Assembly: GCF_048593235.1 (NCBI RefSeq)
Contig: NC_133619.1
Span: 645,336,558 to 645,400,557 of the forward strand
DNA: 64,000 nucleotides
Direction: 5' to 3'
Source of the DNA: Sminthopsis crassicaudata
Taxonomy: Eukaryota
Below the pieces are notes generated by a model. That model was not told where the DNA came from, made no database searches, and saw nothing but the letters and a program-made list of their open reading frames with translations. Shown here one piece after another: positions 1 through 63,635 of the stretch (its first letter is position 1; every line of letters starts with the position of its first letter). The position numbers and the translations under genes are program-made.

Positions 1-3000
1 CTCCTCTAACTTCTCTCCGCCTTTTTTGTTCTCCTCTTCCATCTCTCTTCCTCCACTTTCTCTCTCCTCCTTTTTCTTGTTCTCCTCCTTGTTCTTTTCC
101 TTCCTTTCTCTGCCATTCCTTCTCCTCCTTTTTTCTTGTTCTCCTTTTCTGTCTTCCTTTTTATCTTCCTCCTCTTTTTTTCTTGTTTTCCTCCTCCTCT
201 CTTTCTCCTTCTTTTTATTCTCTTCCTCCTCACCCCTTTCTTCTGTCTCCCTCCTTCTCCTTTTCCTTGTTCTCCTCCTTTCTCCATTTTCCCCTCTCCT
301 CCTTTTCCTTCTCTTCCGTTTTCTTCTCTTCCTCCTCTTCCTCTTGTCCTTTTTCTTATTGTCCTTCTCTCTTCTCCTTCCTCCTTTTTTTTGTTTCCAT
401 CCTCCTTTTTTTCTCCTTTTTCTTCTCTTCCTTCTGTCTCTCTTCTCCTCCTCATCCCTTTCTTCTGTCTCTCCTCCTCCTTTTTCTTCCTCTCCTGTGA
501 TGTTCTGTTTTTCTAAGTTGTAATCGTTCTCTGGGAGGAGGTTTCTTGGGGAGCTTCTGGAGGCAGCCTTGGCTTCAGTTCAGTTCAATAATCCCAAAAT
601 GGAGGCAGGAGTTAAAGTCCTTTACTGTCTCTTTCCAAATCTTATCTCCAGATCCTTTATTTTCTCCTTCAAGTCTTGTCTCCTTCACTTAGGGCTCGGC
701 TAGCTTTCTGGAAGCCTTCCTCTCTCTTTGGTTCCTGAGAGCTCTTGTCCAAGTGTCTCCAGTCTCTCGTCTTCCCAATGTCTCCAGCCAGCACCACTGT
801 GGAATCTTGAATGACTCTTGACTCTGAATCTCCTAGACTGTGGGAATCAGACTCTACCTCCAAAAATGGGCTTGTGGGTACAGCCTAGGCTTGTGAGAGC
901 TCCTTAAAAGTATGCTCTCTTAAAAGTGTGAATTTCATGGAATTCTAGTAAATACATTACTGAACTAGAGAACTGTTAAGTACCATGCTAAATTAGATAA
1001 TTATTGTCTCTATCCCTTCCAGTCACTTAGCACCTTGTAAGAATCCTAACACTCTCCCTCTCCTTTTCCTTCTCTCTCTTCCTTCTTTTGTTTCTCCTCC
1101 CCCTTCTCTCTCCTCCATTTCTCTTACTCATTTTCTTCTCCTTTTCCTTCTCCTCCTATCTCTCTTCCTCCTTCTCCTTTTTCTTGTCCTCTTCCTTTCT
1201 CCTTCTCTACTTTCTCTCTCCTTTTTTTTTGTTCTCCTCCATCTTTCTTCTTCCTCCTTTCTCCTCTTCCTCCACCTTCTCTCTCCTCCTTTTTCTTGTT
1301 CTCCTCCTTGTTCTTTTTCTTCCTTTTTCTGCTATTCCTTCTTCTTCTCCTCCTGTCTCTCTTCATTTTTCCCCTCTCCTTCTCCTTTTCCTTCTCTTCC
1401 TCCTCCTCATTCTTTTCCTTGTCATCCATTTTCTTCTCTTCCTCCTCCTCTTCTCCTTTTTCTTATTCTCCTTCTCTCTTCCCTTCTTTTCTTCTTCATC
1501 CTTTTTCTTGTTTTTCTTCTCCTTTTTCTTCTCTTCCTTCTGTCTCTCTTCTCCTCACTCTTTTCTTCTGTCTCCCCTCCTTTTTCTTCTTCTCTTCCTT
1601 GTCCTTCTCCTACTCTTTCTTCTTCTTCTATACTTCCTCATTTTTCTTCCTCTCCTCCTCCTTTTCCTTCTCTGTCTCTCTTCCTTCTTTTGTTTCTCTT
1701 CCCCTCCTTCTCTCTCCTTCTCCATCTCTCTTCCTCATTTTCTTCTTCTCCATTTCCTTCTCCTGTCTCTCTTCCTCCTCCTTTTTCTTGTCCTCCTCCT
1801 TTCTCCTCCTCTACTTTCTCTCTCCTTTTTTTTTGTTCTCCTCCTTTCTCCTCTACTTTCTCCTTTTTTGGTTCTCCTCTATTTCTCTTCTTCCTGTTTT
1901 CTCCTCTTCCTCCACCTTCTCTCTCCTTTTTCTTCTTCTCCTCCTTGTTCTTTTCCTTCTTTTTTCTGCCCTTCCTTCTCCTCCCCTTTTTTCTTGTTCT
2001 CCTTCTCTCTCTCTTCCTTTTTTTATTCCTCTTCCTCTCTTCCTCCTCACCCCTTCCTTCTGTCTCCCCTTCTCCTTTTTCTTGTTCTCTTCCTGTCTCT
2101 CTTCATTTTTCCCCTCTCCTTCTCCTTTTCTTTCTCTTCCTCCTCCTCATTCTTTTCCTTCTCCTACTTCTTTTATACTTCCTCCTCTTTATGTCTCTTT
2201 CTTTTTCTTCCTGTCCTCCTTTTCCTTCTGTCTCTCTTCCTTCTTTTGTTTCTCCTCTCCTTCTCTTTCCTGCTCCATCTCTCTTCCTCATTTTCTTCTC
2301 TTTTTCCTTCTCCTGTCTCTCTTCCTCCTCCTCCTTTTTCTTGTCCTCCTCCTTTCTCCTCTTCTACTTTCTCTCTCTTTTTTTTGTTCTCTATCTCTCT
2401 TCTTCCTCCTCTTCCTCCACCTTTTTCTTGTTCTCCTCCTTGTTCTTTTCCTTCTTTTTTCTGCCATTCCATCTCCTATTTTTTTGTTCTCCTTCTCTCT
2501 CTTCCTTTTTAAAAATTCCTCCTTTTTTCTTGTTTTCCTCCTCCTCTCTTCCTTCTCACCCCTTCCTTCTGTCTCCCCTCCTCCTTTTCCTTGTTCTTCT
2601 CCTCCTCTCTCCTCATTTTCTCCCTCTCCTTCTGCTTCGTTTTCTTCTCTTCCTCCTCCTCCTCTTCTCCTTTTTCTTGTTGTCCTCTCTCTTCCTTTTC
2701 TTTTCTTCTTCATCCTTTTTCTTGTTTCCCTCTTCCTTTTCTTCTCTTCCTTCTGTCTCTTTTCTCCTCACCCCTTTCTTCTGTCTCCCCTCCTCCTTTT
2801 TCTTCTTCTCTTCCTTGTCTTTCTCCTACTCCTTTTTCTTCTTCTATACTCCCTCCTCTTTATCTGACTCTTCCTCCTTTTCCTTCTGTCTCTCTTTCTT
2901 TTGTTTCTCCTCCCCTTCTTCTCTCTTCTTCTCCATCTCTTTTCCTCATTTCTTCTTCTCCTCCTTTTCCTTCTCTTCCTCCTTCTTGTTCTTTTCCTTC

Positions 3001-4110
3001 TCCTCCTGTCTCTCTTCCTTCTCCTTTTTTTTATCTTCCTCCTTTCTCCTCCTCTACTTTCTCTTTTTCTTGTTCTCCTCCTTATTCTTTTCCTTCTCAT
3101 ACTTTTTCTGCCATTCCTCCTTTTTCTTGTTTTCCTTCTCTATCCTTTTTTCTTCTCTTCCTCCTCACCCTTTCCTTCTGTCTCCCCCCCTCCTCCTCTT
3201 TCTTGTTCTCCTCCTCCTGTCTCTTATTTTCCCCCTCCTTCTCTTCCTCCTCCTTGTACTTTTTTTCTCATCCTTTTTCTTCTCTTCCTCTTCTTCTTTT
3301 TCTTGTTCTCCTCTCTTTCCCTTTTTCTTTTCTTCCTCCTCGTTTTTCTTGTTTCCCTCCTCCTTTTCTTCTCCTTTTTCTTCTCTTCCTCCTCTCTCCT
3401 CCTCCTCACCTCTTTGTTCTGTCTCTCCTCCTCCTTTTTCTTGTTTTCCTCTTTTTTGTCCTTCTATTCCTTTTTCTTCTTCTACACTTCCTCCTCTCTT
3501 TATCTCTCTTCCTCCTTTTTTCTCCTCCCCTTCCTTCTCTCCTTCTCCACCTCTCTTCCTCCTTTTCTTTTTCTCCTCCTTTTCCTCTCTTCCTCCTCCT
3601 TGATTTTTTTCCTTCTCCTTTCTTCCTCATCCTTCCCTTTTTCTTCTCCTCCTCCTTTCCCTTTTCTTTCTCTTTTTTCTTCTTTCCCCCTCCTTTTTTC
3701 TTGTTCTTCTCTCTTCCTCCTTTTCTTTTTCTTTTCTTCTCTTCCTCTTCCTCCCTTTTTTCTTCTCCTCTTCCTGCTCCTCTGAATCTCCTTCTCCACC
3801 TTCTCTCTCCTTTTTCTTGTTCTCCTCCACTTTGTTCTTTTCCTTCCCTTCCTCCTCCTTTTTTTTTCTTCTCTTCCTCCTCCTCCCCTTTTTTTCTCCT
3901 TTTTCTTTCTCTTCCTCCTCATTCTTTTCCTTCTCCTCCCCCTTTTTTTGGGTTCTTCTTTTTTCCTCCTTTTTCTTCTGTCCCTTTTCTTCTCTTCCTC
4001 CCTTTTTTCTTTTCCTCTTCTTCCTCCTTGTTCTTTTCCTTCTCCTTTTTCTTCTTCCTTTTCTTCTCCTCTTCCTCTGCCTCTTTCTCCTTCTCTCTCC
4101 TCTTCCCCTC
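1..4110. repeat. Very long polypyrimidine (CT-rich) low-complexity tract, interrupted by a solo LTR at 496-1051
   Basis: Almost only C/T on the + strand, with recurring cryptic motifs (ttctcctcc, tccttctgtctc, ttttttgttctcctcc). All F/L/S/P-rich and R/E/K/G-rich ORFs here are compositional artefacts. Confidence 0.95.
496..1051 (-). mobile_element. Solo ERV LTR (~556 bp)
   Basis: Normal-complexity island inside the CT tract with TG...CA termini (tgtgatg...cctaaca). The hexamer ctctcc flanks both ends (490-495 and 1052-1057), a candidate 6-bp TSD. AATAAA lies on the - strand at 656-661. Confidence 0.7.
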
Positions 4111-4759
4111 CCCCCTTCTTGGCACATGCTTACCAGGTGAGAAACACTCTGGGCTGGGAGACTTGGATCCGAGTTCCGGCTCTGACCCTATGTCTTGGGG
4201 AAATGCTCCCACTTCAGAGAATCGGCCCCCTGCCTGGGCCCTCAGCAACTATTGGAGAAAGCGAGTCAGAAAGCTTAAGGCAGAGCAGGTTGCCTCGAGC
4301 TGCCCCCTCCTCCTCCCTTTCTATTACAGAACACAAGGGCCCTTAAGGGACCACCAAGCAGGACTCCTTTGGTTTGACTGAAGGTCAGACAAGGGCAGGA
4401 ACTGACCCACAGTCACCAAGCTGAGGCTAGACTCAGCACCAGAGCTGGAGGAGGCTGCACAGCAGGGTCAGGGATGGGAGGATGGGATGGCAAAGCTATA
4501 GACCCTCAGAAAGGGATGTCAGGGCTGGGAGGAGACTCAGGATGGGGGATGTCAAGCTGGTGGGGAGGTCAAGGCTTGGTCTCCTCCAGCTGTCCCCAGG
4601 GGCCAGGGTGGGCTGAGGCTGCAGCTCCGTTGGGGACTGGCTCTTGGCAGGGTTGGCTGGACCAGGAGGGGAGAAGACCCTTTCTGACCTTTCTCTGTCT
4701 CTCTTCTCTACCTGTTTTGCACCCTGGGACACCTGCCTTGGACCCTGGACGAAGTCACT

Positions 4760-34619: not shown

Positions 34620-37600
34620 TCACGCCCGCCGGGGGCTCAGCAGGGTGCTGTCGAACTGGTAGGTGAGCTTCCTCTTGACCTTGCGGATCTCCCCGGTCTT
34701 GGCGTAGTTGCGCAGGGCGCGCGCCAGCTTCTGGTAGGTCATCCGCTTGCGGTTGCCCTTCTGCTGGCCCCAGAGCCGGGCCAGGGCCTCCTTGTGCTTG
34801 GAGGAGAACTGGAAGACGCCGGCGCCCGGCTCCACCCACCACACGCACTCCCGCATGTCCCCCCGCGTCAGCAGCCCCAGCAGGAACTGGTAGAGGCGCA
34901 GCTTCTTCCGGGCACCTGGGGGGAGGGCAGCGTGGCTGGCACGGGGGCCCTGCGGGAGAGCCCCCCGCCCGGCCCACAGCCCGGCACAGAGACTTCGGGG
35001 GCCGTAACCAGTTACTCCTGCTTAATAGACACCAGGCGGGTTCCCTGCAGAACCGAAAAGGCTGAGGGCGAGCCCCCCTGCGGCTCAGCAGCCTGGGCTG
35101 AGTGTCGAGGGTCCCCACCCTAGTTCCAGCTCTGCTTCCCACTCCGCCGGGCCTTCCCCCCGCCCTGGGACCACTTCCTGGTCGGGGAGAGACCGGGAGG
35201 GTCCCTACGGTCCTGAGGCCCCAGCGCTGGGTGCGGGGCCTGACTGGGGGCTCCCCAGGGCCCCGCTTTGTCTGCTGCTCAGCAAGTGGGGCTGCACCAG
35301 GCAGCGGTCGTGGGGGGGGGTTCCTTCCCCGGGGAAGAACAGGGCCAAGGGGGCAAAGGGCAAAGACACCCACTGAGGCTGGTGCAGGAAGTTCCCGGGA
35401 TGAGAGTGGGGGAGGGTCTGCCGGAGGAGCCCGATGGCCTAGGGGCCCTCCGACTGGGGGGGGGGGTGATGCCCCCCACACTCAGGGCTGGCCTCTTCCC
35501 AGCCCAGGGGCTCCCAGGTCAGCCCCTCCCAGCAGACCTGCACCCACTGCCCTCTCTCCCCCCTCCCCCCACGTGCAGACCTCCCTCACCTGCATCTGCT
35601 CCCTCCCCTCCTTCCTCATCTCCCCCCTCCCCCCATGTGCAGCTCCCCCTCACCTGCATCGGCCCCCCTCCCTTCCCCGGCAGCCGCCAGGCCCTCTTCC
35701 GCCTCGCTGTCGGACACCTCCAGGGCCGGGCTCTCCATCGGGAACTCCTCATCCTCAGACGCGCCCGGGCTGGGGAAGGGGGCGAACGGGGCCTGCGCCT
35801 GGGAGCACAGGGGGGAGCAGGACAGAGCTGGTGGGCCTCGGCTCCCCTCCCCCTCCTCTCCAAGCCCCTGGCCCGGAAGCTCCCTCTCCCCTCACTCTGC
35901 CAGAGAAGCCCCTCGAGCCGCCCCCCCCCGCCCCCTTTGGTGGGACCCGAGGAGGGTGTCGGCCCGAATGTCCACCCCCCCCGCCCCCTTTGGTGGGACC
36001 CGAGGAGGGTGTCGGCCCGAATGTCCACCCCCCCCCGCCCCCTTTGGTGGGACCCGAGGAGGGTGTCGGCCCGAATGTCCCGCCCCCCCCCCGCCCCCTT
36101 TGGTGGGACCCGAGGAGGGTGTCGGCCCGAATGTCCACCCCCCCCCCGCCCCCTTTGGTGGGACCCGAGGAGGGTCTCCGGGCCCCGAATGTCCCGCTGC
36201 CCCTCCCCCGCTCCTTGCCCCTCACCTGCCCCCCGAAGTCCTCCTCGGGGTAGCTGAGCCCCGGGCCCGGCTGCGGCTGCCCCCCGGGGGCGTAGCCCAG
36301 GGGCAGGTAGGAGAGCGGGACGCCGGGGAGCGGGCCCAGCGGGGGCGCCGAGGGCTCAAAGGGCTCGTAGGCCAGGCCGGGCGGGGGGGCCAGGCCGGTC
36401 GGGGGCTCTGTCCAGCCCCACAGGGAGTCTGGGGAGGCAGGAAGGACTCAGGGCGCCGGGAGACCGGCCCGGGCACAAAGGGGCGCACGGGGGAGGGAGG
36501 GGCGCGCCCGCATCATTTGCATCCGTGGGGAGGGAGCGGGCTATCCACAGATCCCTGCGGGGGGGGGGGGGAAGGGGATGAAACAAATGGGGCGCACAGA
36601 GGGAGGGGGCTGGGGAGGGGCACGGAGCCTGGCAGGGGAGAGGGAGAACTGGGGAGGGGGAAAGGAAAGGCCATAGGAAGAAGTGAGTAGAATGAGCCGC
36701 TTGGCCAGGGGCCGGGCCCCCGAGGATGCAGGGGGTCGGGCGTACTTACCCACCATGCCTTCGGGCTCCAGGTAGCTCGGGGGTTTGCTGCTGTCCAGGT
36801 CGTAGAAGACCCCATCTGAGTACTGAGGAGGGCACCGGAGGGTCGGGGGCGCGCCCACGGCCCGAGGACGCCCCCCTTAGGGGCTCCCCGGAGGGAGGGG
36901 GGGGGCCGGAGAGAAGCCCCGAGCGGAGACAGCGGGAAGCTGGCGGGGGAGGGGGGGGCGGGGCAGCGCTGGGTGCGAGATCAACTTACCTGGCAGGAGA
37001 ACTGGGAATCCTCCAACCTGGGGAGAGAGCGAGCGGTGGGACGGGGCGCCCAGCGGGCTCTAGTCCCTCCGTGGCCTCTCCCCCCGCCCTTCACTTTCCC
37101 TCCTGAGCGCGGGCCCCGCACCATTCGCACTCTCCCTCCCGTGGCCGCCGGACCCGGGCCCCTCACTCCCCCAGGGCCTTGTTCCCGCGCCCGCCCTCCG
37201 CCCCGGGGTCCCCGCTCCCCTCCCCCCAGCACTGCCGCCTTGCGGTTTGTCTCCTGGAGAGGACGGAGACTGGGGGGGGGGGCGGGCCTGCCCTCCCCCA
37301 CCCGGGGCCTCCCGAACAGGAAGGGGGGCAGGGGGAGCCTTGCACGGAAATATCCCGGGGGAGATTTGCATGGGCACAGGCTGGGGTGGGGGCGGGGCCG
37401 GTTAGTGAAAGTGGGAGAGAAAGTGTGGGGGCGGGGGAGGAACTGCCCCAGCCTGGGGAAAGTAACGGGGCCGAATGGAGATCCAGGGGACAGCCGGGCA
37501 AGAGATGGGGAGAGCAGGAGAGGGAGGNNNNNNNNNNNNNNNNNNNNNNNNNNNNNNNNNNNNNNNNNNNNNNNNNNNNNNNNNNNNNNNNNNNNNNNNN

Positions 37601-38037
37601 NNNNNNNNNNNNNNNNNNNNNNNNNNNNNNNNNNNNNNNNNNNNNNNNNNNNNNNNNNNNNNNNNNNNNNNNNNNNNNNNNNNNNNNNNNNNNNNNNNNN
37701 NNNNNNNNNNNNNNNNNNNNNNNNNNNNNNNNNNNNNNNNNNNNNNNNNNNNNNNNNNNNNNNNNNNNNNNNNNNNNNNNNNNNNNNNNNNNNNNNNNNN
37801 NNNNNNNNNNNNNNNNNNNNGGAGGGAAAGAGAGAAGGAAAAGAGGGAAGGAGGGAAGGGGAGAAAGAGAGGGAGGGAAGGGGGAGACACAGGAGAGAGC
37901 CAGAGCCAGAGCGCGGAGCGGCAGCGCCGGAGGGACCAGGCAGAGGCCGGCGGCCCGGGCGCACCGGGGGGAGGCAGCGCGGGGGCGGGACGCAGGCCCG
38001 GGGTCCTCACTTACTGCGCAGCCTCCAGGGTGAGCAT
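34620..38037 (-). CDS. SPIB: Spi-B ETS transcription factor, 6 coding exons, ~255 aa
   Basis: Exons 38037-38015 (MLTLEAA), 37017-36990, 36822-36750 ([11 protein letters not shown]), 36428-36226, 35798-35654 ([10 protein letters not shown]) and 34915-34620 (ETS: [27 protein letters not shown]...[22 protein letters not shown]). Total 768 nt, in frame. Confidence 0.97.
35921..36195. repeat. ~52-55 bp minisatellite x5 in SPIB intron 4
   Basis: cccccccgccccctttggtgggacccgaggagggtgtcggcccgaatgtccac repeated. Confidence 0.93.
37346..37371. promoter_or_regulatory. kB-like site plus octamer in SPIB intron 1 (candidate internal B-cell promoter or enhancer)
   Basis: GGAAATATCCC (37346-37356) next to ATTTGCAT (37364-37371). 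A further ATTTGCAT lies at 36515-36522 in intron 3. Confidence 0.5.
37528..37820. other. Assembly gap (293 N) in SPIB intron 1, within purine-rich sequence
   Basis: Run of N with GA-rich flanks on both sides. Confidence 0.99.
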
Positions 38038-50647: not shown

Positions 50648-53095
50648 TCACTCGTGGACGTCCCAGATCTCTGACAGCAGTGGGGGGAGCTTCTTGTCTT
50701 GGAGGCGCAGGGCAAACACCTGCTCTGAGTGCACGGAGCTCAGCGTCCGCAGGCTCACCAGCTTCATCAGCATCCGTGGGAACCGGAGCTGGTCCTGGGG
50801 GACACGGAGGAGGGAGACGCCATTAGCGGGCATGGCCTCCGTGGCCTGGCCCGGGGATGGGGAGTACCAGGCAGCGCGCTACCTGTGGCATTTTGATGCG
50901 GGTGTAGGAGAGCAGGGCCTCCACGTAGGGCTGCTGGAGGGCCTCCACCCGGCCCGGCTCCTGCACGTTGGGCCGGTCGGCGGAGAAGATGTTGATGGCG
51001 ATGAGCAGCGCGTATTCGGCGTCATCCAGGCCCAGCCGCCGCATGGCCCTGGAGAACTCGAAGATGGGGTTGATGAACTCGACCTGCAGGCCTGCGGGAG
51101 GGGCAGAAGGCAGGCCTGCTGGCCGGCTCCATTCCAGGGGGGCACATCCCCCAAGATCAGCAGCCCCTGGGGGCCTTCCAGGCACTTGCTGGAAATGACT
51201 TGCCAGGGACAGCGCACAGTGGGTGCTTAATGGGAATGGCGCATAGTAGGTGTTTGTTGGGGAAGGCTTGCTAGGGACAGTGCACAAAGGACACTTGCTG
51301 GGGGTGGTGCACAATAGGCACTCACTGGGGGATGGCGCACAGTGGGCACTCACCAGAGGCCCACCCTTTACCCATGGCTCTCCCCTCCCCCCAGCCCCCG
51401 CACCAGCTCTGTGGAAGTCATCTTTGCTATAGGTGAAATCCTTCAGGAAGGTGATGCACTCCGTCTCATGGTTGTAGCGCCGTGCCGTCTCCAACAACAT
51501 GATCTGGGGGGACAGCAGGGGCATCGGCAGTGCAGCCTCGGTGCCCTGGCCTCCGGCAGTCCCAGCACCCCCTCCCCTTCAGGAGCCCCCCCGCCCTCGG
51601 CCGAACCTCGATGGTAGAGGCCTTGAGCAGAGCGATCTGGTCCTCGCGGCCCAGCTGCAGGAAGCCGGGCACCTGCTTGGCGAAGTCCACGATCTCCTGC
51701 ACCGAGATGATGGCCAGCTCCGTGAAGTGGGCGAAGCGCTGCTGCCGGGCATCTCTCGACTGGGGGTCGGCCCCCAGGGGCCAGGGCTGGCGGGGAGAGG
51801 CGTGGTGAGGTGGCGCCGGCCCCGGGGCCCTCCCTGCCCTGTTTCAGCCTCCCCTCCCCACTGGGGCAACAGCGGTCCTTACCGTGACCTTGGGCTGGTC
51901 GGAGAAGGAGCGCTTGTTACACTGCAGCTGGGCCGACACCAGCTGCTGGATCATGAGCTTCTGGTCGGGCGTCAGCTGGATGCTGCCGCCGTCGGCGGGG
52001 GACTCGGAGGAGGCAGCCGGGGAGCCCGCGGGCCCAGGGACAGGCGTGCCAGGGGCAGCCGTGGCCCCCGGGCTGGGCCCCGAGCCCGAGGGCTGATGCT
52101 TCTGGATCTTCTTCTTGCGGATCTGCTCCTCGGACAGCACGCCTGGGAGGAAGACGCCGGGGCCTGAGCACGTGCCCTGCCCCGTGCCCGCCCCGGCAGC
52201 CCCCCGGCCCCCCACTCACACTGCTCTCTCATGCCCGCCTCGCGGCACTTGCGCAGACGGCACTCCTGGCACTTGCGGCGCATGAAGGCGTTCATGTGGC
52301 AGGCGCCACCCCCGCGGCAGGTATAGCGCCGAGCACCTCCCCGCACCACGCTGCGCCGGAAGAAGCCTTTGCAGCCCTCGCAGCTGAGCACGTTGTAGTG
52401 GAAGCCCGAGGCCTTGTCCCCGCACACGCGGCACAGCTCGTGGCCCAGCATCTTGGGGGCCGGGCCCTTCTTGCGCTTCCGCTCGGGCTCCGGCTCCGGC
52501 TCCTCCACTGTGGGGGGTAGGGAGGGGGTGGGTGTGAGGGCCAGAGAGGAGGGAGGGGTGTGGGCTCATGGGCTCCTGAGGTGGGCGCAGGGGTCAGGGG
52601 GTCCCCGGGGTGGGCTAGAGGGCCGATGGGACGGGGGGAGCGAGGACAGGCAGGTCCTGGATCCTACCAACGCCACAGGCGGAGCCCTCGCCGGCCGCCA
52701 CGGCGGGGATGGGGCCGTCGGGCTCGGTGCTAGGGGGCCCGGTCCCTGTCATCCCCGGCTCTGCTCCCTCCTCCTTTATGCACTTCAAGGGCCCTTCGTC
52801 CTCATCTTCGCCTGGGGAGAGAGAGAGGCTGGGGGGGGCTGCCGCCCCGCCCAGAGGGACTCATCCACCTCAGCCCTGGCCCAGCCTAGGGAGCAGTTGG
52901 AGGACGCTCCTCTAGGGGGCGCAGGAGGAGGGGCGCCAGCATCCCAGACCGGAGTTCAAATCCTGCCTTTCACACTCCCGGTGACTCTGGGCCCACAATC
53001 CCGTCACCCATCTGTAAAACTCAGGGCGGGAAACAGCACTCACCATGGGCGGGAGCGGGGGCCACGGGGGTGCCAAGGATCCCAGGGGAAGCCAT
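50648..53095 (-). CDS. NR1H2: Liver X receptor beta; 8 coding exons, ~459 aa
   Basis: Exons 53095-53044, 52811-52668, 52507-52220 (C4 zinc fingers [25 protein letters not shown]), 52142-51883, 51786-51607, 51503-51404, 51091-50883 and 50794-50648 ([13 protein letters not shown]). Total 1380 nt, in frame. Confidence 0.98.
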
Positions 53096-54000: not shown

Positions 54001-54499
54001 TGGTCTGAGCTGGTCCGAGTCAGGGGGAGGCCAGACTCACTGCAGAGCCCAAACCGGCAGGCCGCTGACAAAGGCCCCGCCCCTCCCCGTGCGCAGGCGT
54101 GCTAACGCTCCCGGCCACTTGGGAATCTGCGGGCTGGTGAGGAGCGGGGCTGAAAAGAACGCTGTGTGCGGATCTGAGCCAGAGGCCTCACCCCGGGAGG
54201 TCCCCCAGGAGGGCGAACCCCAGGGCCAAACCCCCTTGGGGTGCTGTGTTCTAAAGGGGCCGCCCCATGGTCTCCACCCACGTCTTTCCTTCCTTCCACT
54301 AAGTTTGTCAGGTCCCTGGCCCGGGGGGAGGGGAGGGGTCCCCCTGCAGGGACGGAACCGCACGGGCCCCGGGACACTGAGGGGGGATGAGCTTAAAGAA
54401 AGAAAGGAACAGAAAGATCGCAGCCCCCAATCCCCGCGGCACCGAGCCCTGGCACAGGGGGCACGGGCTGGCCGCTGGGGAGCCTCCGGCCGCTCTGCC

Positions 54500-56220
54500 C
54501 CCTTCCGGCTGCAAATCCATCTGCCCGTCTGTCTGTCTTCCCATTCATCTGTGCTTATTTCTGTCTATCTGGATGTCTGTCCATCTTCCCATTCATCTGT
54601 CTGCCCTTCTGTCTGTCTGTCTGTCTGCAAATCCATCTGTCTGTCCGTCTATCTGTCTGTCTGCAAATCCATCTGTCAGTATATCTGTCTGTCCGTCTGT
54701 CTGTCTTCCCATTCATCTGTCTGCCCTTCTGTCCATCTGTCTGCAAATCCATCTGTCTGTCCGTCTGTCCGTCCATCTGTCTGCAAATCCATCTGTCCGT
54801 CTGTCTGTCTTCCCATTCATCTGTGCTTATTTCTGTCTATCTGGATGTCTGTCCATCTTCCAATTCATGTCAGCCCTTCTGTCCGTCTGCAAATCCATCT
54901 ATCTGTCCATCTTCCCATTCATCTGTCTGTCCATCTCTGTCTTCCCATTCATCTGTCTGTCCGTCTGCAAATCCATCTGTCCGACTGGATGTCTGTCCAT
55001 CTTCCCATTCATCTGTCTGCCCTTCTGTCTGTCTGTCTATCTGCAAATCCATCTGTCCGCCTGTATGTCTGTCTGTCTTCCTATTCATCTGGCTGCCCTT
55101 CTGTCTGTCTGTAAATCCATCTGTCTGTCCATTTTCCCATTCATCTGTCTGTCCGTCTGTCTGTCTGTCCGTCTTCCCATTCATCTGTCTGCCCTTCTGT
55201 CCATCTGTCTGTCTGTCTTCCCATTCATCTGTCTGCCCTTCTGTCCATCTGTCTGCAAATCCATCTGTCCGTTTTTCTGTCTGTCTTCCCATTCATCTGT
55301 CCGTCTGTCTGTCTTCCCATTCATCTGTCTGCCCTTCTGTCTGTCTGTCTGTCTGCAAATCCATCTGTCTGTCCGTCTGTCTGTCTGTCTGCAAATCCAT
55401 CTGTCAGTATATCTATCTGTCTTCCCATTCATCTGTCTGCCCTTCTGTCCATCTGTCTGCAAATCCATCTGTCTGTCCGTCTGTCCGTCCGTCTGTCTGC
55501 AAATCCATCTGTCTGTCCGTCTGTCCGTCTGTCTGTCTGTAAATCCATCTGTCTGTCCATTTTCCCATTCATCTGTCTGTCCGTCTGTCTGTCTGTCCGT
55601 CTTCCCATTCATCTGTCTGCCCTTCTGTCCATCTGTCTGTCTGTCTTCCCATTCATCTGTCTGCCCTTCTGTCCATCTGTCTGCAAATCCATCTGTCTGT
55701 CCGTCTGTCCGTCCGTCTGTCTGCAAATCCATCTGTCTGTCCGTCTGTCCGTCCGTCTGTCTGCAAATCCATCTGTCTGTCCGTCTGTCCGTCTGTCCGT
55801 CCGTCTGTCTGCAAATCCATCTGTCCATCTGTCTATCTGTCTTCCCATTCATCTGTCTGTCCTTGTTTCTATTTATCTGGATGTCTGTCCATCTTCCATT
55901 CATCTGTCTGCCCTTCTGTCCATCTGTCTGTCTGCAAATCCATCTGTCTGTCCGTCTGTCTGTGTGTCTGCAAATCCATCTGTCCGCCTGTCTGTCTGTC
56001 TTCTCATTCATCTGTCTGTCCATCTGTCTGTCTTCCCATTCATCTATCTGTCCGTCTGTCTGTCTTCCCATTCATCTGTCTGTCCTTGTTTCTATCTATC
56101 TGGATGTCTGTCCGTCTGCCCTTCTGTCCGTCCGTCTGTCTGCAAATCCATCTGTCCATCTGGATGTCAGCACATGATCCGTCCATCTGTCCTGCCCATG
56201 CATCTGTTTTTCTGCCCATC
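54500..56220. repeat. Complex (TCTG/TCCA)n-derived satellite between the NR1H2 and ACP4 5' ends
   Basis: ctgtctgcaaatccatctgtctgtccgtctgtctgtcttcccattcatctgt variants over about 1.7 kb. Confidence 0.95.
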
Positions 56221-56463
56221 CAGATCTTTCTGCCTGCACCCGTCTGTAGATCTGCCCGGGTTTCTCACAGGCTGCAGAGAAAGTCTGGGGGCAGCCTCCT
56301 GCCTCCGGAAGCCGCCTGGACTTGAGCCTGTGGGCAATGATTAGGGGTTGGGGTGGTGGGGAGGTAATGACTGGGTGGGGCGGGCAGCAGGAGGTGGGAG
56401 GGAGCAGGCGCGGGGCGAGTAGCTCAGTCCTATCTGTGTGCTCCAGAGCCAAGACGGGCGGCC

Positions 56464-59268
56464 ATGGGGGGTCCCCATCACCTGAGCCCCCTCCTGCTCC
56501 TGGCCTCCCTCCTGCCCCTGGGGGGGAGCTTGCCTGAGCCCCGGAGGGGACCATTGCTTTTCGTGACGTTGGTGAGGCCCGTGCCCATTTCCAGGCCAGC
56601 CCGGGGCTCTGCTGAGCCGGTCCTCATCCCAGACCCCCCCCATTTCACCAGGTCTATCGCCACGGCGACCGTGCCCCCCTGGATTCCTACCCCACAGACC
56701 CTCATCAGAACAAGACCCTGTGGCCCCAAGGGCTAGGCCAGCTCACCCAGGTGAGAGACCAGGGAATGGGGGGGGAGGCGAGGGTGGCCCCTTACTCCCT
56801 AACCCCCCATCTTCAGGAGGGCGTGCAGCAGCAGCTGGAGCTGGGCCGCTTCCTAAGGGACAGATACCGCGACTTCCTGAGCCGGGAGTATCATCGGGAA
56901 GAGGTAAGGCGCAAATCTGGTCCCTCCAGCCTCAGGCCCAGCCCCTCATGACTTCCCCTCCCCCGGCCTCCCGGGCCCAGGCCCCTATGACCTTGCCTCC
57001 CCGGCCTCGGCCCCAGCCCCCTTTACCTCCCGCTGCTTCCCCAGCTGTACGTGAGGAGCACGGACTACGACCGCACCCTGCAGAGTGCCCAGGCCAACCT
57101 GGCCGGGCTCTTCCCCGGGTCTCCCAGCAGCCCTGGCTGGATGCCCGTGCCCGTCCACACCGTCCCGGCCACTGAAGACAAGGTCAGGGAGAGGCTTGGC
57201 GGGGGAGGCAGGGGGTCGGGGAGCAGCCCCGGCACACTTCGGGGAGGGGGTCCACTAAGCTGGCGGCCCAGGCTGGCCTCTCCTGAGGGGGCGGACCTGG
57301 CCTTTGCACCAGGGAGCATCCAAAGGGGGGGAGGGAGGAGGAGGGGGAGGAGGGGAAAAAAAAAGAGGAGGAGGAGGGGGAGGAGGGGAAGCAAGAGGGG
57401 GAGGGGGGGAGGACAGGGCCAGCAAGGAGGCTTGGCCAGAGGGGGCGCTGAGTGGGCCGGCCCTGCCCAGCTCCCAGGCTCCCTCCTGCCCCCTGCAGCT
57501 GCTCAAGTTCCGGACCCGGGGATGTCCCCAGTACCAGAAGCTGTTGGAGGAGACCGTGGCGGGAGAAGAGTACCAGGCAGCCCTGGAGGGCTGGAGAGTG
57601 AGGGGGGAAGGGGGCCGCATGGGGGGGGCCCTGAGGGTGGGGGAAAGCGGGGGAGGGCTCCAAGGCCCCTCTAGCCGGGGCTCCTTCCCCCCAGGACTTC
57701 CTGGTGCGTCTGGAGAACCTCACGGGGCTGTCCCTGGCCGAGGGGCCCCTCCACAGGGCCTGGAAAGTGCTGGACACCCTGACCTGTCAGGTAGGTCCCC
57801 GCTCCCCCGCCCCCGCCGCGCCCCCCAGTCGGCGCCCCGCCCCCACCCTGCCGCCTTCCTCCCTAGCGCGCGCACGGGCTCCCCCTGCCTGCCTGGGCCA
57901 CCCCCGAGGTGCTGAGCTCCCTGGCCCAGGTGTCGGCGCTGGACGTCCGAGCCCACGTGGGCCCCCCGCGGGCGCAGGAGAAGGCGCGGCTCACAGGCGG
58001 TGAGTGGGGGCGGGGCGGGGGCGGGGCGGGAGGGCGGGGGCGGAGCTCAGGCTGCCCGTGCCCACCCCCAGGAGTCCTGCTCGATGCCATTCTGAGCAAC
58101 TTCACCCAGGCGCAGGCCCGCGGGGGGGCCCTCAGGATGGTCATGTACTCGGCTGTGAGTGCAGGGGGGAGTAGGGTTGGGGGGATGGGGGGGTTGGGGG
58201 GGTGTGGGCGGGGCCCGGGGTGGGGGGAGGGTCCGAGGGGGCGGGGCTGGGGCCCTGAGTGCAGGTTCCCTCCCCAGCATGACAGCACGCTGCTGGCCCT
58301 CCAGGGCGCCCTGGGCCTCTATGACGGGCACCATCCGCCCTACGCCGCCTGCCTCGGGTTTGAATTCTGGAAACATCTGGGGCAGCTGGAACAGGAGGAG
58401 AAGGAGGAGGAGGAGGGGTAGGCCAGAAGGGAGCTTGAGGCTGAGTGGAGTGCCTCCCGTGCCCCCTGGGTGCCTCCCGTGCCCCTGAAATCTTCCCGTG
58501 CCCCCTGGGTGCCTCCCGTGCCCCTGAAATCTTCCCATGTCCCTGGGTACCTCCCGTGCCCCTGGGTACCTCCCGTGCCCCTGAAATCTTCCCATGTCCC
58601 TGGGTGCCTCCCGTGCCCCTGAAATCTTCCCGTGCCCCTTGGGTACCTCCCGTGCCCCTGGGTGCCTCCTGTGCCCCTGAAATCTTCCCATGTCCCTGGG
58701 TGCCTCCCGTGCCCCAAATCTCCCTGTGCCCCCTGGGTGCTTCCTTTGCCCGCTGGGTGCCATCCCTTCCTGCAACCCTCCCTCTTGGGGTGTCCTGTGC
58801 TCTGGGGGGAGGTGGGACAGGGGGTCTGAGGCAGACCCCGGCCCCGGAGCCCCCTTCCTCCATGCCCCCTCACCCACTCTCTGTCCCCAGGAACGTCACC
58901 GTCTCTCTCTTCTACCGGAACGACTCTTCGCGGCCCCCCCTGCCCCTGGAGCTCCTGGGCTGCCCCTCGCCGTGCCCGCTGGGGCGTTTCCGCCGGCTCA
59001 CCGCCCCGGTGCGCCCACCCCCTGGGGGACCGCTGTGCCGCCCCCCCGCCGAGGACGCTGCCCGTGCAGGTGGGCCCGCTGCGGGCCAAGGGCTGGGGGA
59101 CGGGCCGGGGCTCCGGCTGGGACTCACCCGCCTCCTTCCCCCTCTCCTGTAGGTGCTGCCGTGCCCCTGCTGGCCGGGGCCGTGGGCATGCTGGGCATCC
59201 TGAGCTTGGGGCTCGGGGCTCTCCTGTGGAGCCGGGGCTCTGCGAGACCCCAGGAAGGCCCCATCTGA
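56464..59268 (+). CDS. ACP4: Acid phosphatase 4 (testicular acid phosphatase, ACPT); 11 exons, ~425 aa, type I membrane histidine phosphatase
   Basis: Exons 56464-56571, 56652-56750 (RHGDRAP), 56817-56903, 57045-57182, 57499-57597, 57695-57790, 57867-57999, 58072-58154, 58278-58417 (HD motif [13 protein letters not shown]), 58891-59069 and 59153-59268 (TM helix). Total 1278 nt, in frame. Confidence 0.95.
58449..58735. repeat. 19/38-bp minisatellite in ACP4 intron 9
   Basis: gtgcctcccgtgcccctgaaatcttcccatgtccctgg and its 19-bp half-unit. Confidence 0.9.
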
Positions 59269-59373
59269 GAGGGCCGGAGACCCCCGGCCGGAGGGCTCAT
59301 GTGGGCCATCCTCGGCTCCAAGCATAAACCTGATGAAGCTCTGGGAAGGGGGTGTCCGTGTGTGTTTGGGGGC

Positions 59374-59602
59374 CCTCGTCTTGACATAAACATTCTTATC
59401 ACCTTCGCACTTCTGTCAACCATTTTAGGCGGATGAGGGGGCCTAAACCAAACCCACATTCTAAAAAATCTAGCCCACTCCTCTATCGCACACATAGGCT
59501 GAATAGTAGTCATTGTTCACATTAACCCAACAATAACAATCCTCGACTTAACCATCTATATCTTAGCCACATTGACCACATTTATAACCCTCAACATTAC
59601 CC
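59374..59602 (+). pseudogene. MT-ND2: Nuclear mitochondrial DNA segment (NUMT) derived from ND2
   Basis: AT-rich island in GC-rich DNA. With the vertebrate mitochondrial code it reads [72 protein letters not shown], with two in-frame TGA=Trp. Confidence 0.92.
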
Positions 59603-60124
59603 CCTCGGTTCCTACTTTTGGGGGCTCGGGAGGCCCCCTCCTAATGAGAGCTTTAATGAAGCGCTCGGGGGGAGGTGCCCCCAATCTCTTAGCCCCCACC
59701 CCCTGCACACAGCCTCACACCCCACAACAGTCAGAGAACACAAAGTGGTGACCTTAGGTCTGGGCCCCCTGCCAGGAGCCAGCCCAGTGCTGGGAAGGGG
59801 CTGGGGGCCCAGAGAAATCTCGAGTGAGCCCTCGGGACTGAGGATCCTCCTCCTCTGAGCCCAGGGCTGGCCCAGCCCAAGAAAACGGGGTGTCCGGACT
59901 CATCTTGCAGAGTCCTGTTTGGGGAAACTGAGTCCTGGGAAAGGTCAGCAGTGGCCCAGCGCCTTCCAAAAAGGACCCTGACCCCGGGAAGGTCTCCCGC
60001 ACCCTTTCCCTGGTAGAAAAAGGGAGACTGGAGGTGGGGCAGGGAGTGTGTGGCCCTTCCTGCCTGGGCCTCTGCAGCCTTGGTCTGGCTGGCCATGGGG
60101 GCCGCCCTCACTGCCCCAGCCCCC

Positions 60125-60608
60125 CCCCCCATATCCCGCATTCTAAGGTTTCTCCCTGACATCCCACCTTCTAAGCCCCCCACATCCCACGTTTTAAGGT
60201 TTCTCCCTGACATGTCATGTTCTAAGGTCCCCCCATCACATCCCACGTTCTAAGGTTTCTCCCTGACATCCCACCTTCTAAGGCTCCCTCTTACAGCTCA
60301 CGTTCTAAGGCCCCCCCATCACATCCCACGTTCTAAGGTTTCTCCCTGACATCCCACCTTCTAAGCCCCCCACATCCCACGTTTTAAGATTTCTCCCTGA
60401 CATGTCATGTTCTAAGGTCCCCCCATCACATCCCACGTTCTAAGGTTTCTCCCTGACATCCCACGTTCTAAGGTTTCTCCCTGACATCCCACCTTCTAAG
60501 GCTCCCTCTTACAGCTCACGTTCTAAGGCCCCCCCATCACATCCCACGTTCTAAGGTTTCTCCCTGACATCCCACCTTCTAAGGCTCTCTCTGACATCCC
60601 ATGTTATT
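60125..60608. repeat. 23-28 bp minisatellite with higher-order structure
   Basis: Variants anchored on ttctaagg (…tttctccctgacatcccacc, …ccccccatcacatcccacg, …ctccctcttacagctcacg). Confidence 0.92.
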
Positions 60609-60879
60609 AGGCCCCCTTGCTGACCCTCTGTCCCCAGGCCCGCAGCCCCCACTTTCTCCAATGAGTGCTCTCCCCTGCTCCCTCCCCAGCAGCTTGAGCT
60701 CTGAGGGGGAGGATCGGACTGAGTCACCTCGGCTGGGGGTGGGGGTGGGGGGTAGGTTTTAGTCCCCAGAGGGGAAATGAACACTGTGTGTGAATCTAAC
60801 AGCTGCTCCCACTGCTCAGGGAGAAAGACTGAGGTCCACAGGAGGGCAGGGCTTCCCTCAAGTGGCTCCGCATCTCCAG

Positions 60880-61850: not shown

Positions 61851-62800
61851 GCCTGGCTGCCCCACACTGACCTGACCTGCTGGCTGTGTGCATCTCTCTG
61901 CCCCCCTCCCCCACGGTTCTCCCTCCTGTGCTCTGACCACTCACCTCCCTCTCCCCCTTTGAGTCCCAGCTAAAATCCCCCCTCCTCCAGGAAGCCTACC
62001 TCCCTCACACCCTGGAATCCCAGCCTCCGCTCTGTGCTTTTCCCCCCATGACCCTCCCTGTATCTTGTTTGAACGTGGACTTTGGCTCCTTGTCTCCTCC
62101 GTTATATCATGAGCTCCTCCAGGGCAGAGCCTTGGGTGTCCCCAGAGCTCGGGCCAGTGCCCGGCATACAGTGGGCGCTGCATAAATGCTTCTTGGCCGG
62201 AGAGCACGTGGTCCGTGCTGAGCCGGAGGCGGCGCTGCCTGTGGCTGCTGATTTCAGTTCCTCCCAAGGCTCTAGGCTCCATCCCTCCGGGTCTACTCCC
62301 CCCCCCCAAATTCAGCACCTCTGCTTAGAAACAGCAAATCACTTTTATTTTCGCAAACCGCGGCGGGGTAAAGCTCTTGTGTTCGTCTTGTTCTTCGGGA
62401 GCTGTGGGGCTCCCGCGATCTGGGGATCTCGGCTTCCAGCCACAGTAATTCCCTCGTTCCCGAGGTTCTAGGTTTTTCTAGGATATTTCTAAAATAAGGA
62501 AAAGCAAGCAAGCCTGAAGCCCGCAGCATGTGAGCCCCCTTTCCCAGAGGAGGAAGCTGGGGCTGAGGAGGCCCAGAGCCGGGGAGCCCGCCGGCGAGAC
62601 CAGGCCGCTGGAAGATGAAGGGGGGCGGCTCCTGCTCGGAGCTCCCCGGGGGCATGGGTGGGCGTCCTTCGGGACCTTCCCTGGGAGACGAGCTTTAAGG
62701 GCGCTTGCCCCGCCCACGTGCCCTAGGGCCCCGCCCCTTCTCAGCCATTGGCTTCCTCAGATATCGCCCCTCCCCCCGGCCCCGTGGGCCCTCCCCTCAC

Positions 62801-63091
62801 CTTGGACGCGCAGCTCCACGTAGTCGCTGGGCGGGGAGCCGGCGAAGGGCGCGGCCGTCTCGAAGTAGAGGCAGCTGTAATTGCCCGCGTGAAAGTCCCA
62901 GACCTCCCGGAGGACGAAGTCGGCCTCCGGGCCGGGGGCGCTGAGCACCTGCAGGGGCCGGTCGCTGTGCTGCCTCAGCAGGGCGAACCTGGCGTGGGCC
63001 CGGCCCCCCCGGCACTGCAGGGTCACGTTGGTGCCGGGAGCGATCACGGCGTCCTGGGGCTGGACCCACAGGGTCGGCTTGGGCAGGGTTT
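62801..63091 (-). CDS. Single C2-type Ig-domain exon of a leukocyte receptor complex-type gene (LILR/OSCAR/TARM1/A1BG-like); the rest of the gene was not located
   Basis: 291-nt phase 1-1 exon (ctag|AAACC...CCAAG|gtgagg) encoding ETLPKPTLWVQPQDAVIAPGTNVTLQC...ADFVL...AGNYSCLY...SPPSDYVELRVQ. The LPKPxL start, NVTLxC, YSCxY and S-P-S-D-x-V-E-L end are typical of the LRC Ig family. Confidence 0.85.
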
Positions 63092-63635
63092 CTAGACACA
63101 GAAAAGGCCACACGGTGTTAGCTGCAGGAGCGGGGGAGGGGCAAGGCGGGGGGGGGGAGGGGGCTAGCACGCAGAACGTGCGAAGTGGGGGGGGAGTGTA
63201 ACAAAATCATAGAGTTGGAAGGGAGCCTAGAACATAAAACTTGGTCAGGAGAGGCCGATAATGGAATCAAGACCGCCTCACAGAGCAGCAAACAGCGGGG
63301 AAGCGGAGGCCGGGGACCCCGGAATCGCAGCTGCCCTGGGGCCGGCGGGGGGCCTCTGTTCTCCATCCTCGTCCCCTCCGATGAGTGGGCGGCAGAGGCC
63401 CAGGGATGCCCGGCCCGGGTCCCTAGGAAGCAGGGAGCCAGCACGAAGTCACGGACAGAGCCCCGACTTCGGAGCGCTACCTGGAACAAAGTCTAGACGC
63501 CCTTAGCCGGGTCACTTGCAGACTCGGCTGTTTCCCGAAGGGCTTTGGGAAGATGAGATAATATGCGGAGCGGTTCGCAAAGTAAACTACCGCAGTTTTA
63601 GCTGATTCTAACCCGATTCTAACCGGATCAAGCAT

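What the first reader, a model, noticed from the sequence alone, without database searches (positions are those of the whole stretch)
59374..59602. Mitochondrial ND2 NUMT inserted about 100 bp downstream of the ACP4 stop codon
Seen: an abrupt ~230 bp AT-rich segment with one unbroken reading frame under the mitochondrial code ([10 protein letters not shown]...SSIAHMGW...NP), with ATA/TGA codon usage typical of mtDNA. Established: this is the conserved mid-region of ND2, and placentals typically have NQTQ where marsupials have NQTH. Inference: residues that break ND2 conservation (ILKNLAH where LRKILAY is expected; ILDL where ILNL is expected) suggest neutral decay after an insertion that is not recent. 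Its position probably puts it inside the ACP4 3'UTR, and I saw no AATAAA nearby. CATAAA hexamers at ~59326 and inside the NUMT (~59385) are candidate poly(A) signals, so the NUMT may have been exapted for 3' end formation.
Basis: partly seen in the sequence, partly recalled or inferred. Interest (0 to 1): 0.7.

Follow-up and report, generated by a model that had tools for sequence, protein, structure and literature searches.

The report
Decayed mitochondrial ND2 fragment near ACP4
A roughly 220-base piece of the mitochondrial ND2 gene was pasted long ago into nuclear DNA just past the end of an ACP4-like acid phosphatase gene; it is real but an ordinary mitochondrial relic, and the RNA data suggest the gene's message ends before it, so it is probably not used to form the message's end.

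Summary
Window 59383-59601 (start uncertain by about 10 bases) is a nuclear copy of mitochondrial ND2 (a NUMT), covering about residues 150-223.

- **Identity:** under the mitochondrial code the frame is open, and both TGA codons sit at conserved Trp positions. Its pieces match only ND2 chains in the PDB, in colinear order.
- **Composition:** 11% G and about 41% GC, against flanks of 63-79% GC.
- **Not an assembly error:** contigs from two separate studies bridge both junctions with 0-1 differences, at single-copy depth.
- **Decay:** 8-13 other ND2-like contigs differ from it by 10-19%.
- **Exaptation not supported:** a spliced RNA contig of the phosphatase gene ends at 59345. That is 22 nt from the start of the upstream CATAAA (59323) and just before a GU-rich tract (59350-59372). 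No RNA contig covers 59348-59883. The NUMT therefore lies about 38 nt beyond the apparent poly(A) site. Contigs cannot prove an RNA end.

Earlier scan notes call this genome a dunnart, a dasyurid marsupial. Dasyurids have a published burst of NUMT insertions. This is an ordinary new member of a known kind, of low interest. The scan has no other note of this NUMT.

The parts
59383..59601 (+). NUMT: nuclear copy of mitochondrial ND2, about residues 150-223, in sense orientation on the + strand. The 5' edge could lie as far left as 59373.
   Evidence: Mitochondrial-code translation. Colinear PDB ND2 matches. Edges from where other ND2-like contigs begin and stop matching (tables 7 and 8). 11% G.
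59434..59436 (+). TGA read as Trp in GGWGG; a stop in the nuclear code
   Evidence: The position lies between the ND2-matching pieces.
59500..59502 (+). TGA read as Trp in HMGWM; a stop in the nuclear code
   Evidence: It corresponds to ND2 residue 189, between the matches 168-188 and 192-223.
59458..59478 (+). Decayed motif ILKNLAH. Other ND2 copies of this organism read MRKILAY here.
   Evidence: Differences at 59460, 59462, 59468 and 59476 are carried by 92-96% of the depth in 10-11 other contigs, translated.
59545..59547 (+). Codon GAC (D in ILDL). Other copies have AAC (N).
   Evidence: 59545 G>A, 174.8 of 193.8 depth, 6 contigs.. Human ND2 has ILNL here.
59151..59345 (+). Last exon of the ACP4-like gene as seen in RNA: the transmembrane tail, the stop at 59266-59268, and a 77-nt 3'UTR
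   Evidence: X11 contig 12 is spliced 59067>59151 (GT..AG) and ends at 59345. Translation.
59323..59328 (+). CATAAA, the probable poly(A) signal of the gene
   Evidence: The RNA contig ends 17 nt after its 3' end and 22 nt after its 5' end, which is the modal distance reported in PMC11699766. CAUAAA is a listed weak signal variant (PMC3053588).
59350..59372 (+). GU-rich tract (GGGTGTCCGTGTGTGTTTGGGGG), the probable downstream element of the poly(A) site. It lies entirely in nuclear sequence to the left of the NUMT.
   Evidence: Sequence. Its role is inferred from its position 5-27 nt after the contig end.
59385..59390 (+). CATAAA inside the NUMT. No sign that it is used.
   Evidence: RNA depth is zero over 59348-59883 in X11 and X20.
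59373..59378 (+). CCCTCG, repeated at 59602-59607 on the far side of the NUMT. Probably chance.
   Evidence: 7.8% of control pairs of 15-mers at the same spacing in the neighbourhood share a word at least as long.
58890..59067 (+). Penultimate exon of the ACP4-like gene
   Evidence: Spliced contigs in X11 and X20. Translation.

Best explanation
A fragment of mitochondrial DNA of about 220 bp, from the middle of ND2, was captured at a chromosome break. NUMTs are generally thought to arise this way, by end-joining repair. The break lay about 115 bp after the stop codon of an ACP4-like acid phosphatase gene.

The insertion is old, roughly 10-25 million years by a rough inference. Since then the copy has drifted neutrally. 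It has at least four replacements at residues that ND2 conserves, and its two Trp codons are TGA, which are stops in the nuclear code. It cannot encode anything.

The copy sits about 38 nt beyond the gene's apparent poly(A) site (CATAAA at 59323, RNA contig end at 59345, GU-rich tract at 59350-59372). It is therefore a passive passenger in the gene's immediate 3' flank. It is not part of the mature mRNA and is not the source of its 3'-end signal.

Shown: identity as ND2, nuclear location, decay, and the absence of RNA contigs over it. Inferred: the insertion mechanism, the age, and the exact cleavage site.
For: - **ND2 identity:**
- **Nuclear location:** X1 contigs 58686-59541 and 59515-60166 match with 0 differences, at depth 20.8 and 18.9 against a neighbouring 16.2. 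From another study, X5 contigs 58672-59466 (0 differences) and 59515-60170 (1 other letter and 1 gap, both listed outside the NUMT) also bridge the junctions.
- **Divergence:** other ND2-like contigs differ by 10-19%. The deepest one (depth 217 in X1) differs by 19 of 118 bases.
- **Decay:** states unique to the window fall at codon positions 1 and 2 of conserved residues (L40R, N42I, H45Y, D68N in the others). Sites that vary among the other copies are mostly third-position and synonymous.
- **RNA:** X11 and X20 carry GT..AG spliced contigs of the gene. X11 contig 12 ends at 59345, and depth is 0 over 59348-59883 in both runs. X11 holds 0.31 of the sampled words, which matches my count of about 1209 exon bases out of 4001 up to 59345.
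- **Signal:** CAUAAA is a recognised variant signal, and the 22-nt distance is the modal one.
- **Background:** many NUMTs are expected in a dasyurid genome (Hazkani-Covo 2022, as cited in PMC10764098).
Against: - All four runs are assembled contigs, which cannot prove where an RNA ends. No poly(A) tail was seen at 59345.
- Only one RNA contig, at depth 11, reaches the last exon. The tissue is unknown, so minor or tissue-specific longer isoforms that run through the NUMT are not excluded.
- The deepest ND2-like contig may be a multi-copy NUMT rather than the living mitochondrial genome. No mitochondrial contig lay on the NUMT in the RNA runs, perhaps because long mitochondrial contigs were filtered out. 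This makes the age estimate soft.
- No orthologous empty site was examined.
Confidence: 0.8

Rival explanations
1. The NUMT lies inside the ACP4 3'UTR, and its internal CATAAA (59385) has been taken over as the gene's poly(A) signal.
For: No AATAAA or ATTAAA lies within 59200-60700, and a CATAAA lies at the NUMT's 5' edge. Contigs cannot strictly show an RNA end (header).
Against: The RNA contig ends at 59345, before the NUMT, and RNA depth is 0 over 59348-59883 in both RNA runs. An identical hexamer lies upstream at 59323, at the modal 22 nt from that end, and is followed by a GU-rich tract. The NUMT has no G/U-rich tract 10-40 nt after 59390; the segment is 11% G.
Confidence: 0.06
2. The NUMT is not in the main mRNA, but it acts on the nascent transcript just after cleavage. 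It could be a pause or termination-zone element, or a back-up poly(A) site for read-through transcripts in some tissue.
For: It begins only about 11 nt after the GU-rich tract, so RNA polymerase II must cross it before terminating (position). Weak RNA contigs reappear at 59976-60170 in X11, at depth 3.
Against: Nothing positive supports it. There is no RNA over the NUMT, and no conservation data. The sequence drifts at ND2-conserved sites as a neutral sequence would. The downstream contigs lie in or beside a repeated stretch (from about 60100) that has raised DNA depth.
Confidence: 0.1
3. Assembly chimera or mitochondrial contamination: the ND2 piece is not really at this nuclear site.
For: NUMT-like joins are a known assembly artefact. 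The best DNA holder (X1) may be the sample the assembly came from.
Against: Both junctions are bridged by contigs with 0-1 differences in X1 and in X5, which comes from another study, at single-copy depth. The segment differs by 10% or more from every other ND2-like contig in those runs. A contaminant from the living mitochondrial genome would not.
Confidence: 0.01

Closest known systems
NUMTs of dasyurid marsupials (burst of insertions in Dasyuridae; Hazkani-Covo 2022, as cited in PMC10764098 and PMC12129016)
   Same: A short fragment of a mitochondrial coding gene sits in nuclear DNA close to a gene. It reads only in the mitochondrial code and has diverged from the other copies. The same organism holds many other ND2-like nuclear copies: 8-13 contigs at 81-90% likeness.
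   Different: Nothing in kind. This particular copy has not been placed on a tree or dated by orthology. That the genome is a dunnart comes only from earlier scan notes.
Poly(A) signals imported into 3'UTRs by inserted elements (Can-SINEs in dog, PMC11699766; transposable elements at poly(A) sites, PMC2553571)
   Different: There the insert lies inside the transcript, and the mRNA ends about 22 nt after the insert's hexamer. Here the RNA contig ends before the insert, and the hexamer at that distance is host sequence.
Coding NUMTs with intact mitochondrial reading frames (cNUMTs and dcNUMTs, PMC12129016)
   Same: The frame is open under the mitochondrial code despite more than 10% divergence.
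   Different: Those are whole genes, and some show signs of selection. This is a 73-codon internal fragment with replacements at conserved residues. An open frame of this length after a few neutral changes is unremarkable.

Membership tests
NUMT (nuclear mitochondrial DNA segment) | Sequence derived from a mitochondrial gene | tested here: met
   Colinear ND2-only PDB matches. Pfam Proton_antipo_M. TGA at two conserved Trp positions. L-strand-like composition with 11% G. ND2-like contigs of the same organism align at 81-90% and run on into upstream ND2.
NUMT (nuclear mitochondrial DNA segment) | Joined to nuclear sequence on both sides in independent data | tested here: met
   X1 and X5, from different studies, each have contigs with 0-1 differences across 59383 and across 59601, at single-copy depth.
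NUMT (nuclear mitochondrial DNA segment) | Distinct from the living mitochondrial genome, with signs of non-functional evolution | tested here: met
   It differs by 10-19% from all other ND2-like contigs. Four replacements unique to the window fall at conserved residues. Which contig is the living mitochondrial genome was not settled.
NUMT (nuclear mitochondrial DNA segment) | Empty orthologous site in an outgroup, which would date the insertion | not testable with these tools
   No other marsupial genome is on hand. The single sequencing-run search and the single read-laying run were both spent. Organism B (X20) is RNA only and does not cover the site.
Insert-derived (exapted) poly(A) signal | The insert lies within the transcribed 3'UTR of the mature mRNA | tested here: not met
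   The X11 spliced contig ends at 59345, and RNA depth is 0 over 59348-59883 in X11 and X20. Caveat: the data are contigs, only one contig reaches the last exon, and the tissue is unknown.
Insert-derived (exapted) poly(A) signal | The mRNA ends 10-30 nt after the insert's hexamer, and no host signal serves that end | tested here: not met
   The host CATAAA at 59323 lies 22 nt (measured from its 5' end) before the contig end. The insert's CATAAA at 59385 lies after it.
ACP4 (testicular acid phosphatase), branch-2 histidine phosphatase | His_Phos_2 domain with the RHGDR active-site motif | tested here: met
   Exons match PF00328 (E 1.8e-07 for 57045-57179, above the cut-off; weaker matches for two others). 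Prostatic acid phosphatase is the best PDB match (E 7e-10). YRHGDRAP is encoded at 56652-56747.
ACP4 (testicular acid phosphatase), branch-2 histidine phosphatase | Orthology to ACP4 rather than to ACP2 or ACP3 | not tested
   Inferred only. The gene has a hydrophobic C-terminal tail. Its neighbour on the - strand at 51972-52508 is an LXR-beta-like (NR1H2) exon, which I recognised from memory. The joined protein model was not searched, because operator rules allow exon-by-exon searches only.

The most novel reading that the evidence does not exclude
The NUMT was kept because it landed in the ACP4 termination zone. There it could serve as a back-up poly(A) site (CATAAA at 59385) or as a pause element for read-through transcripts in a tissue not sampled here, such as testis or developing tooth. 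That would be a rare case of mitochondrial DNA taken over for nuclear 3'-end processing.
Probability: 0.05. Interest if true: 0.35.

Novelty: new member of a known kind. Interest (0 to 1): 0.12.

Why it matters
It matters little in itself. NUMTs are common, and dasyurids are already known to carry many. The copy has three practical uses:
- It is a datable presence/absence marker for dasyurid phylogeny.
- It is a warning for ND2-based barcoding or phylogenetics in this group. This run set holds at least 8-13 distinct ND2-like nuclear sequences that could be co-amplified.
- It is a small worked example that an AT-rich insert with a signal-like hexamer next to a stop codon need not be part of the transcript.

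Tried and rejected
- **Wrong frame at first.** My first references were out of frame, and one piece was too short. I corrected this.
- **Full mitochondrial-code translation not searched.** The roughly 74-residue translation has no reference, because the tools read TGA as a stop. It was searched only as its two pieces. The large profile search was not used, because ND2 identity was not in doubt.
- **Flanking CCCTCG repeat.** I considered the repeat at 59373 and 59602 as a target-site duplication or microhomology. I rejected it as not significant: 7.8% of control pairs do as well.
- **Extending the NUMT left to 59373.** One contig aligns from there, but by my count likeness over those 10 bases is only about 60%. 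This was left open.
- **Rfam.** A scan of 58500-60500 on both strands found nothing near any gathering score.
- **Other NUMT pieces in the window.** The only other low-GC stretches are a polypyrimidine tract and repeats.
- **Paper searches.** The search for numt + marsupial + ND2 gave nothing relevant. I did not find the paper on the Dasyuridae NUMT burst itself among the results, so it is cited through PMC10764098 and PMC12129016.
- **ACP4 protein model.** The joined model was not assembled or searched; exons were searched one by one by reference.
- **Assembly gap.** The N run at 37528-37820 was not touched.

Full report
**What is in the sequence**

Between about 59383 and 59601 the window drops from 63-79% GC to about 41% GC, with a strong shortage of G (A 0.33, C 0.30, G 0.11, T 0.26). 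The frame that starts at 59341 is open under the vertebrate mitochondrial code. It reads, in part, [19 protein letters not shown] and [13 protein letters not shown]. The two W residues are encoded by TGA, at 59434-59436 and 59500-59502. Under the nuclear code both are stops.

**Is it ND2?**

The tools do not accept a protein read through a stop, so I searched the pieces between the TGA codons separately.
- 59437-59499 (21 aa) matched only NADH-ubiquinone oxidoreductase chain 2 (ND2) of pig, mouse, cattle, sheep, human and fly, at residues 168-188 (best E 0.01).
- 59503-59607 (35 aa) matched only ND2, at residues 192-223 (E 0.004).

The two matches are colinear, and the TGA between them falls on residue 189. 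Pfam gives Proton_antipo_M for the first piece (E 0.007, under the cut-off because of its length). Two independent ND2-only matches in register, TGA at two conserved Trp positions, and L-strand-like composition together leave no real doubt.

**Is it really nuclear, at this site?**

I laid contigs of four public runs on 56400-60400 at 80% likeness.
- In X1, one contig covers 58686-59541 and another covers 59515-60166. Both have 0 differences, at depth 20.8 and 18.9. Neighbouring unique sequence has depth 16.2.
- In X5, from a different study, contigs cover 58672-59466 (0 differences) and 59515-60170 (1 other letter and 1 gap, both listed outside the NUMT).

Each junction is therefore bridged in two studies at single-copy depth. 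The assembly-chimera alternative is excluded for practical purposes.

**Other ND2 copies, boundaries and decay**

The same two DNA runs hold 8-13 further ND2-like contigs that lie on the segment at 81-90% likeness. Most have about nuclear depth, so they are other NUMTs. One has depth 217 in X1, about 13 times nuclear depth. It differs from the window at 19 of 118 bases. It is the best candidate for the living mitochondrial genome, but it could be a multi-copy NUMT. The same haplotype has depth 7.4 in X5.

Two of these contigs stop matching before 59383 and 59373. They run on into sequence that translates as AIIYQIAPCL, the ND2 stretch just upstream. Likeness ends at 59598-59601.

I translated the listed differences. 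At the sites where 90% or more of the other copies' depth disagrees with the window, the changes are:

| Place | Change in the other copies, relative to the window |
|---|---|
| 59415 | synonymous |
| 59439 | synonymous |
| 59462 | L40R |
| 59468 | N42I |
| 59476 | H45Y |
| 59545 | D68N |

With I39M, the other copies read MRKILAY and ILNL. Those are the residues placental ND2 also has at these positions. By contrast, sites that vary among the other copies are mostly third-position and synonymous, as expected for change on the selected mitochondrial lineage.

If the other copies carry the ancestral state at each of them, six of the nine changes unique or nearly unique to the window run from A/T to G/C, and none runs the other way. 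This fits drift toward the very GC-rich surroundings. That reading is an inference.

**Age (inference only)**

About 4-9 changes specific to the window in about 190 bp is 2-5%. The deepest other copy has changed at about a third of the third positions. Ordinary mammalian nuclear and mitochondrial rates would then put the insertion on the order of 10-25 million years ago, with wide error. I did not test orthologous sites.

**The gene upstream**

X11 and X20 carry contigs with GT..AG joints. They are therefore RNA. The exons they define are 56651-56747, 56814-56901, 57043-57180, 57497-57597, 57695-57788, 57865-57998, 58278-58381, 58890-59067 and 59151-59345, plus one near 58069.

These exons encode a branch-2 histidine acid phosphatase:
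- YRHGDRAP is present.
- PF00328 matches at E 1.8e-07.
- Prostatic acid phosphatase is the nearest solved relative (E 7e-10).
- The last exon encodes a hydrophobic tail and a stop at 59266-59268.

That this is ACP4 rather than a paralogue rests on the neighbouring LXR-beta-like exon (51972-52508, - strand), which I recognised from memory, and on the tail.

**Where does the message end?**

The one RNA contig that reaches the last exon (X11 contig 12, depth 11) ends at 59345. Neither RNA run has any depth from 59348 to 59883. X11 holds 0.31 of the sampled words of the 4001-base stretch. My count of exon bases up to 59345 is about 1209 of 4001, or 0.30.

The end lies 17 nt after the 3' end, and 22 nt after the 5' end, of the CATAAA at 59323-59328. 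That is the modal distance for poly(A) signals (PMC11699766). CAUAAA is one of the recognised weak signal variants (PMC3053588). Directly after the end comes a GU-rich tract at 59350-59372, where a downstream element is expected.

All three parts of an ordinary poly(A) site are therefore host sequence to the left of the NUMT, which begins about 38 nt after the apparent cleavage site. The 3'UTR would be only 77 nt long. There are three caveats:
- Contigs cannot prove an RNA end.
- No A tail was seen at 59345.
- The tissue is unknown, so a minor longer isoform is not excluded.

**Verdict on the interpretation**

The NUMT call and the claim of old, neutral decay are right. The suggestion that the NUMT lies in the 3'UTR and was taken over for 3' end formation is not supported.

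**Mechanism of insertion**

NUMTs are generally held to be captured during end-joining repair of double-strand breaks. I looked for a junction signature. CCCTCG occurs at 59373-59378 and again at 59602-59607. However, 7.8% of control pairs in the neighbourhood share a word at least that long, so I do not count it.

**Context and novelty**

Earlier notes of this scan describe the genome as a dunnart, a dasyurid marsupial. I did not verify this. Dasyurids are reported to have undergone a burst of NUMT insertion (Hazkani-Covo 2022, cited in PMC10764098 and PMC12129016). That fits the many ND2-like nuclear contigs seen here. This copy is an ordinary new member of a well-known kind.

No Rfam family matches the region on either strand. 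The only earlier scan note on this stretch is the finding under review.

Noticed in passing
window 1040-4140: A polypyrimidine (C/T-rich) low-complexity tract of about 3 kb, 33-42% GC. It is free of mitochondrial-code stops in all three + frames only because A and G are nearly absent.
   Followed up: partly
window 54106-54135 and 56651: In run X20 (organism B) a 1642-nt RNA contig joins sequence ending at 54135, which is followed by a GT donor, to the phosphatase exon at 56651. This skips the exon with the ATG and signal peptide at 56464. About 1.3 kb of the contig lies upstream. It may be an alternative upstream exon or promoter, in the gap shared with the NR1H2-like gene.
   Followed up: partly
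window 54400-56250: A long tandem-repeat-like stretch between the NR1H2-like and ACP4-like genes. ORF translations repeat CLSVCPSV-type units on the + strand and DRQTDG-type units on the - strand.
   Followed up: no
window 57740-57873 and 58142-58275: DNA contig depth spikes to 705 and 1328 in X1, against about 16 nearby. Loose ends there consist of G runs (58179, 58213). These look like G-rich low-complexity stretches inside introns of the phosphatase gene, shared with many other loci.
   Followed up: no
window 60100-60600: A C-rich stretch (GC skew about -0.55) with repeated ORF translations (MSGRNLKTWDVGGLEGG units on the - strand) and raised DNA depth of 45-87. It is probably a tandem or dispersed repeat downstream of the gene.
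   Followed up: no
window 59491 (other loci of the same organism): Two ND2-like contigs in X1 stop matching at the equivalent of 59491 and continue into a CAGAGA-type microsatellite. This is another ND2 NUMT elsewhere in the genome, with a different breakpoint (table 7).
   Followed up: no
window 56651-59050 (run X20): The listed spliced contigs labelled organism B match organism A's phosphatase exons with 0 differences. Organism B is therefore a very close relative, or a different label for the same species.
   Followed up: no
window 62757-63170, - strand: An ORF that encodes an immunoglobulin-like domain (…TLWVQPQDAVIAPGTNVTLQC…YSCLY…), a likely exon of a leukocyte-receptor-type gene downstream of the phosphatase gene. 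I recognised it by eye only.
   Followed up: no
window 59383-59601: If the other copies carry the ancestral state, six of the nine changes that are unique or nearly unique to this NUMT copy run from A/T to G/C, and none runs the other way. This fits GC-biased drift in a flank of about 70% GC.
   Followed up: partly
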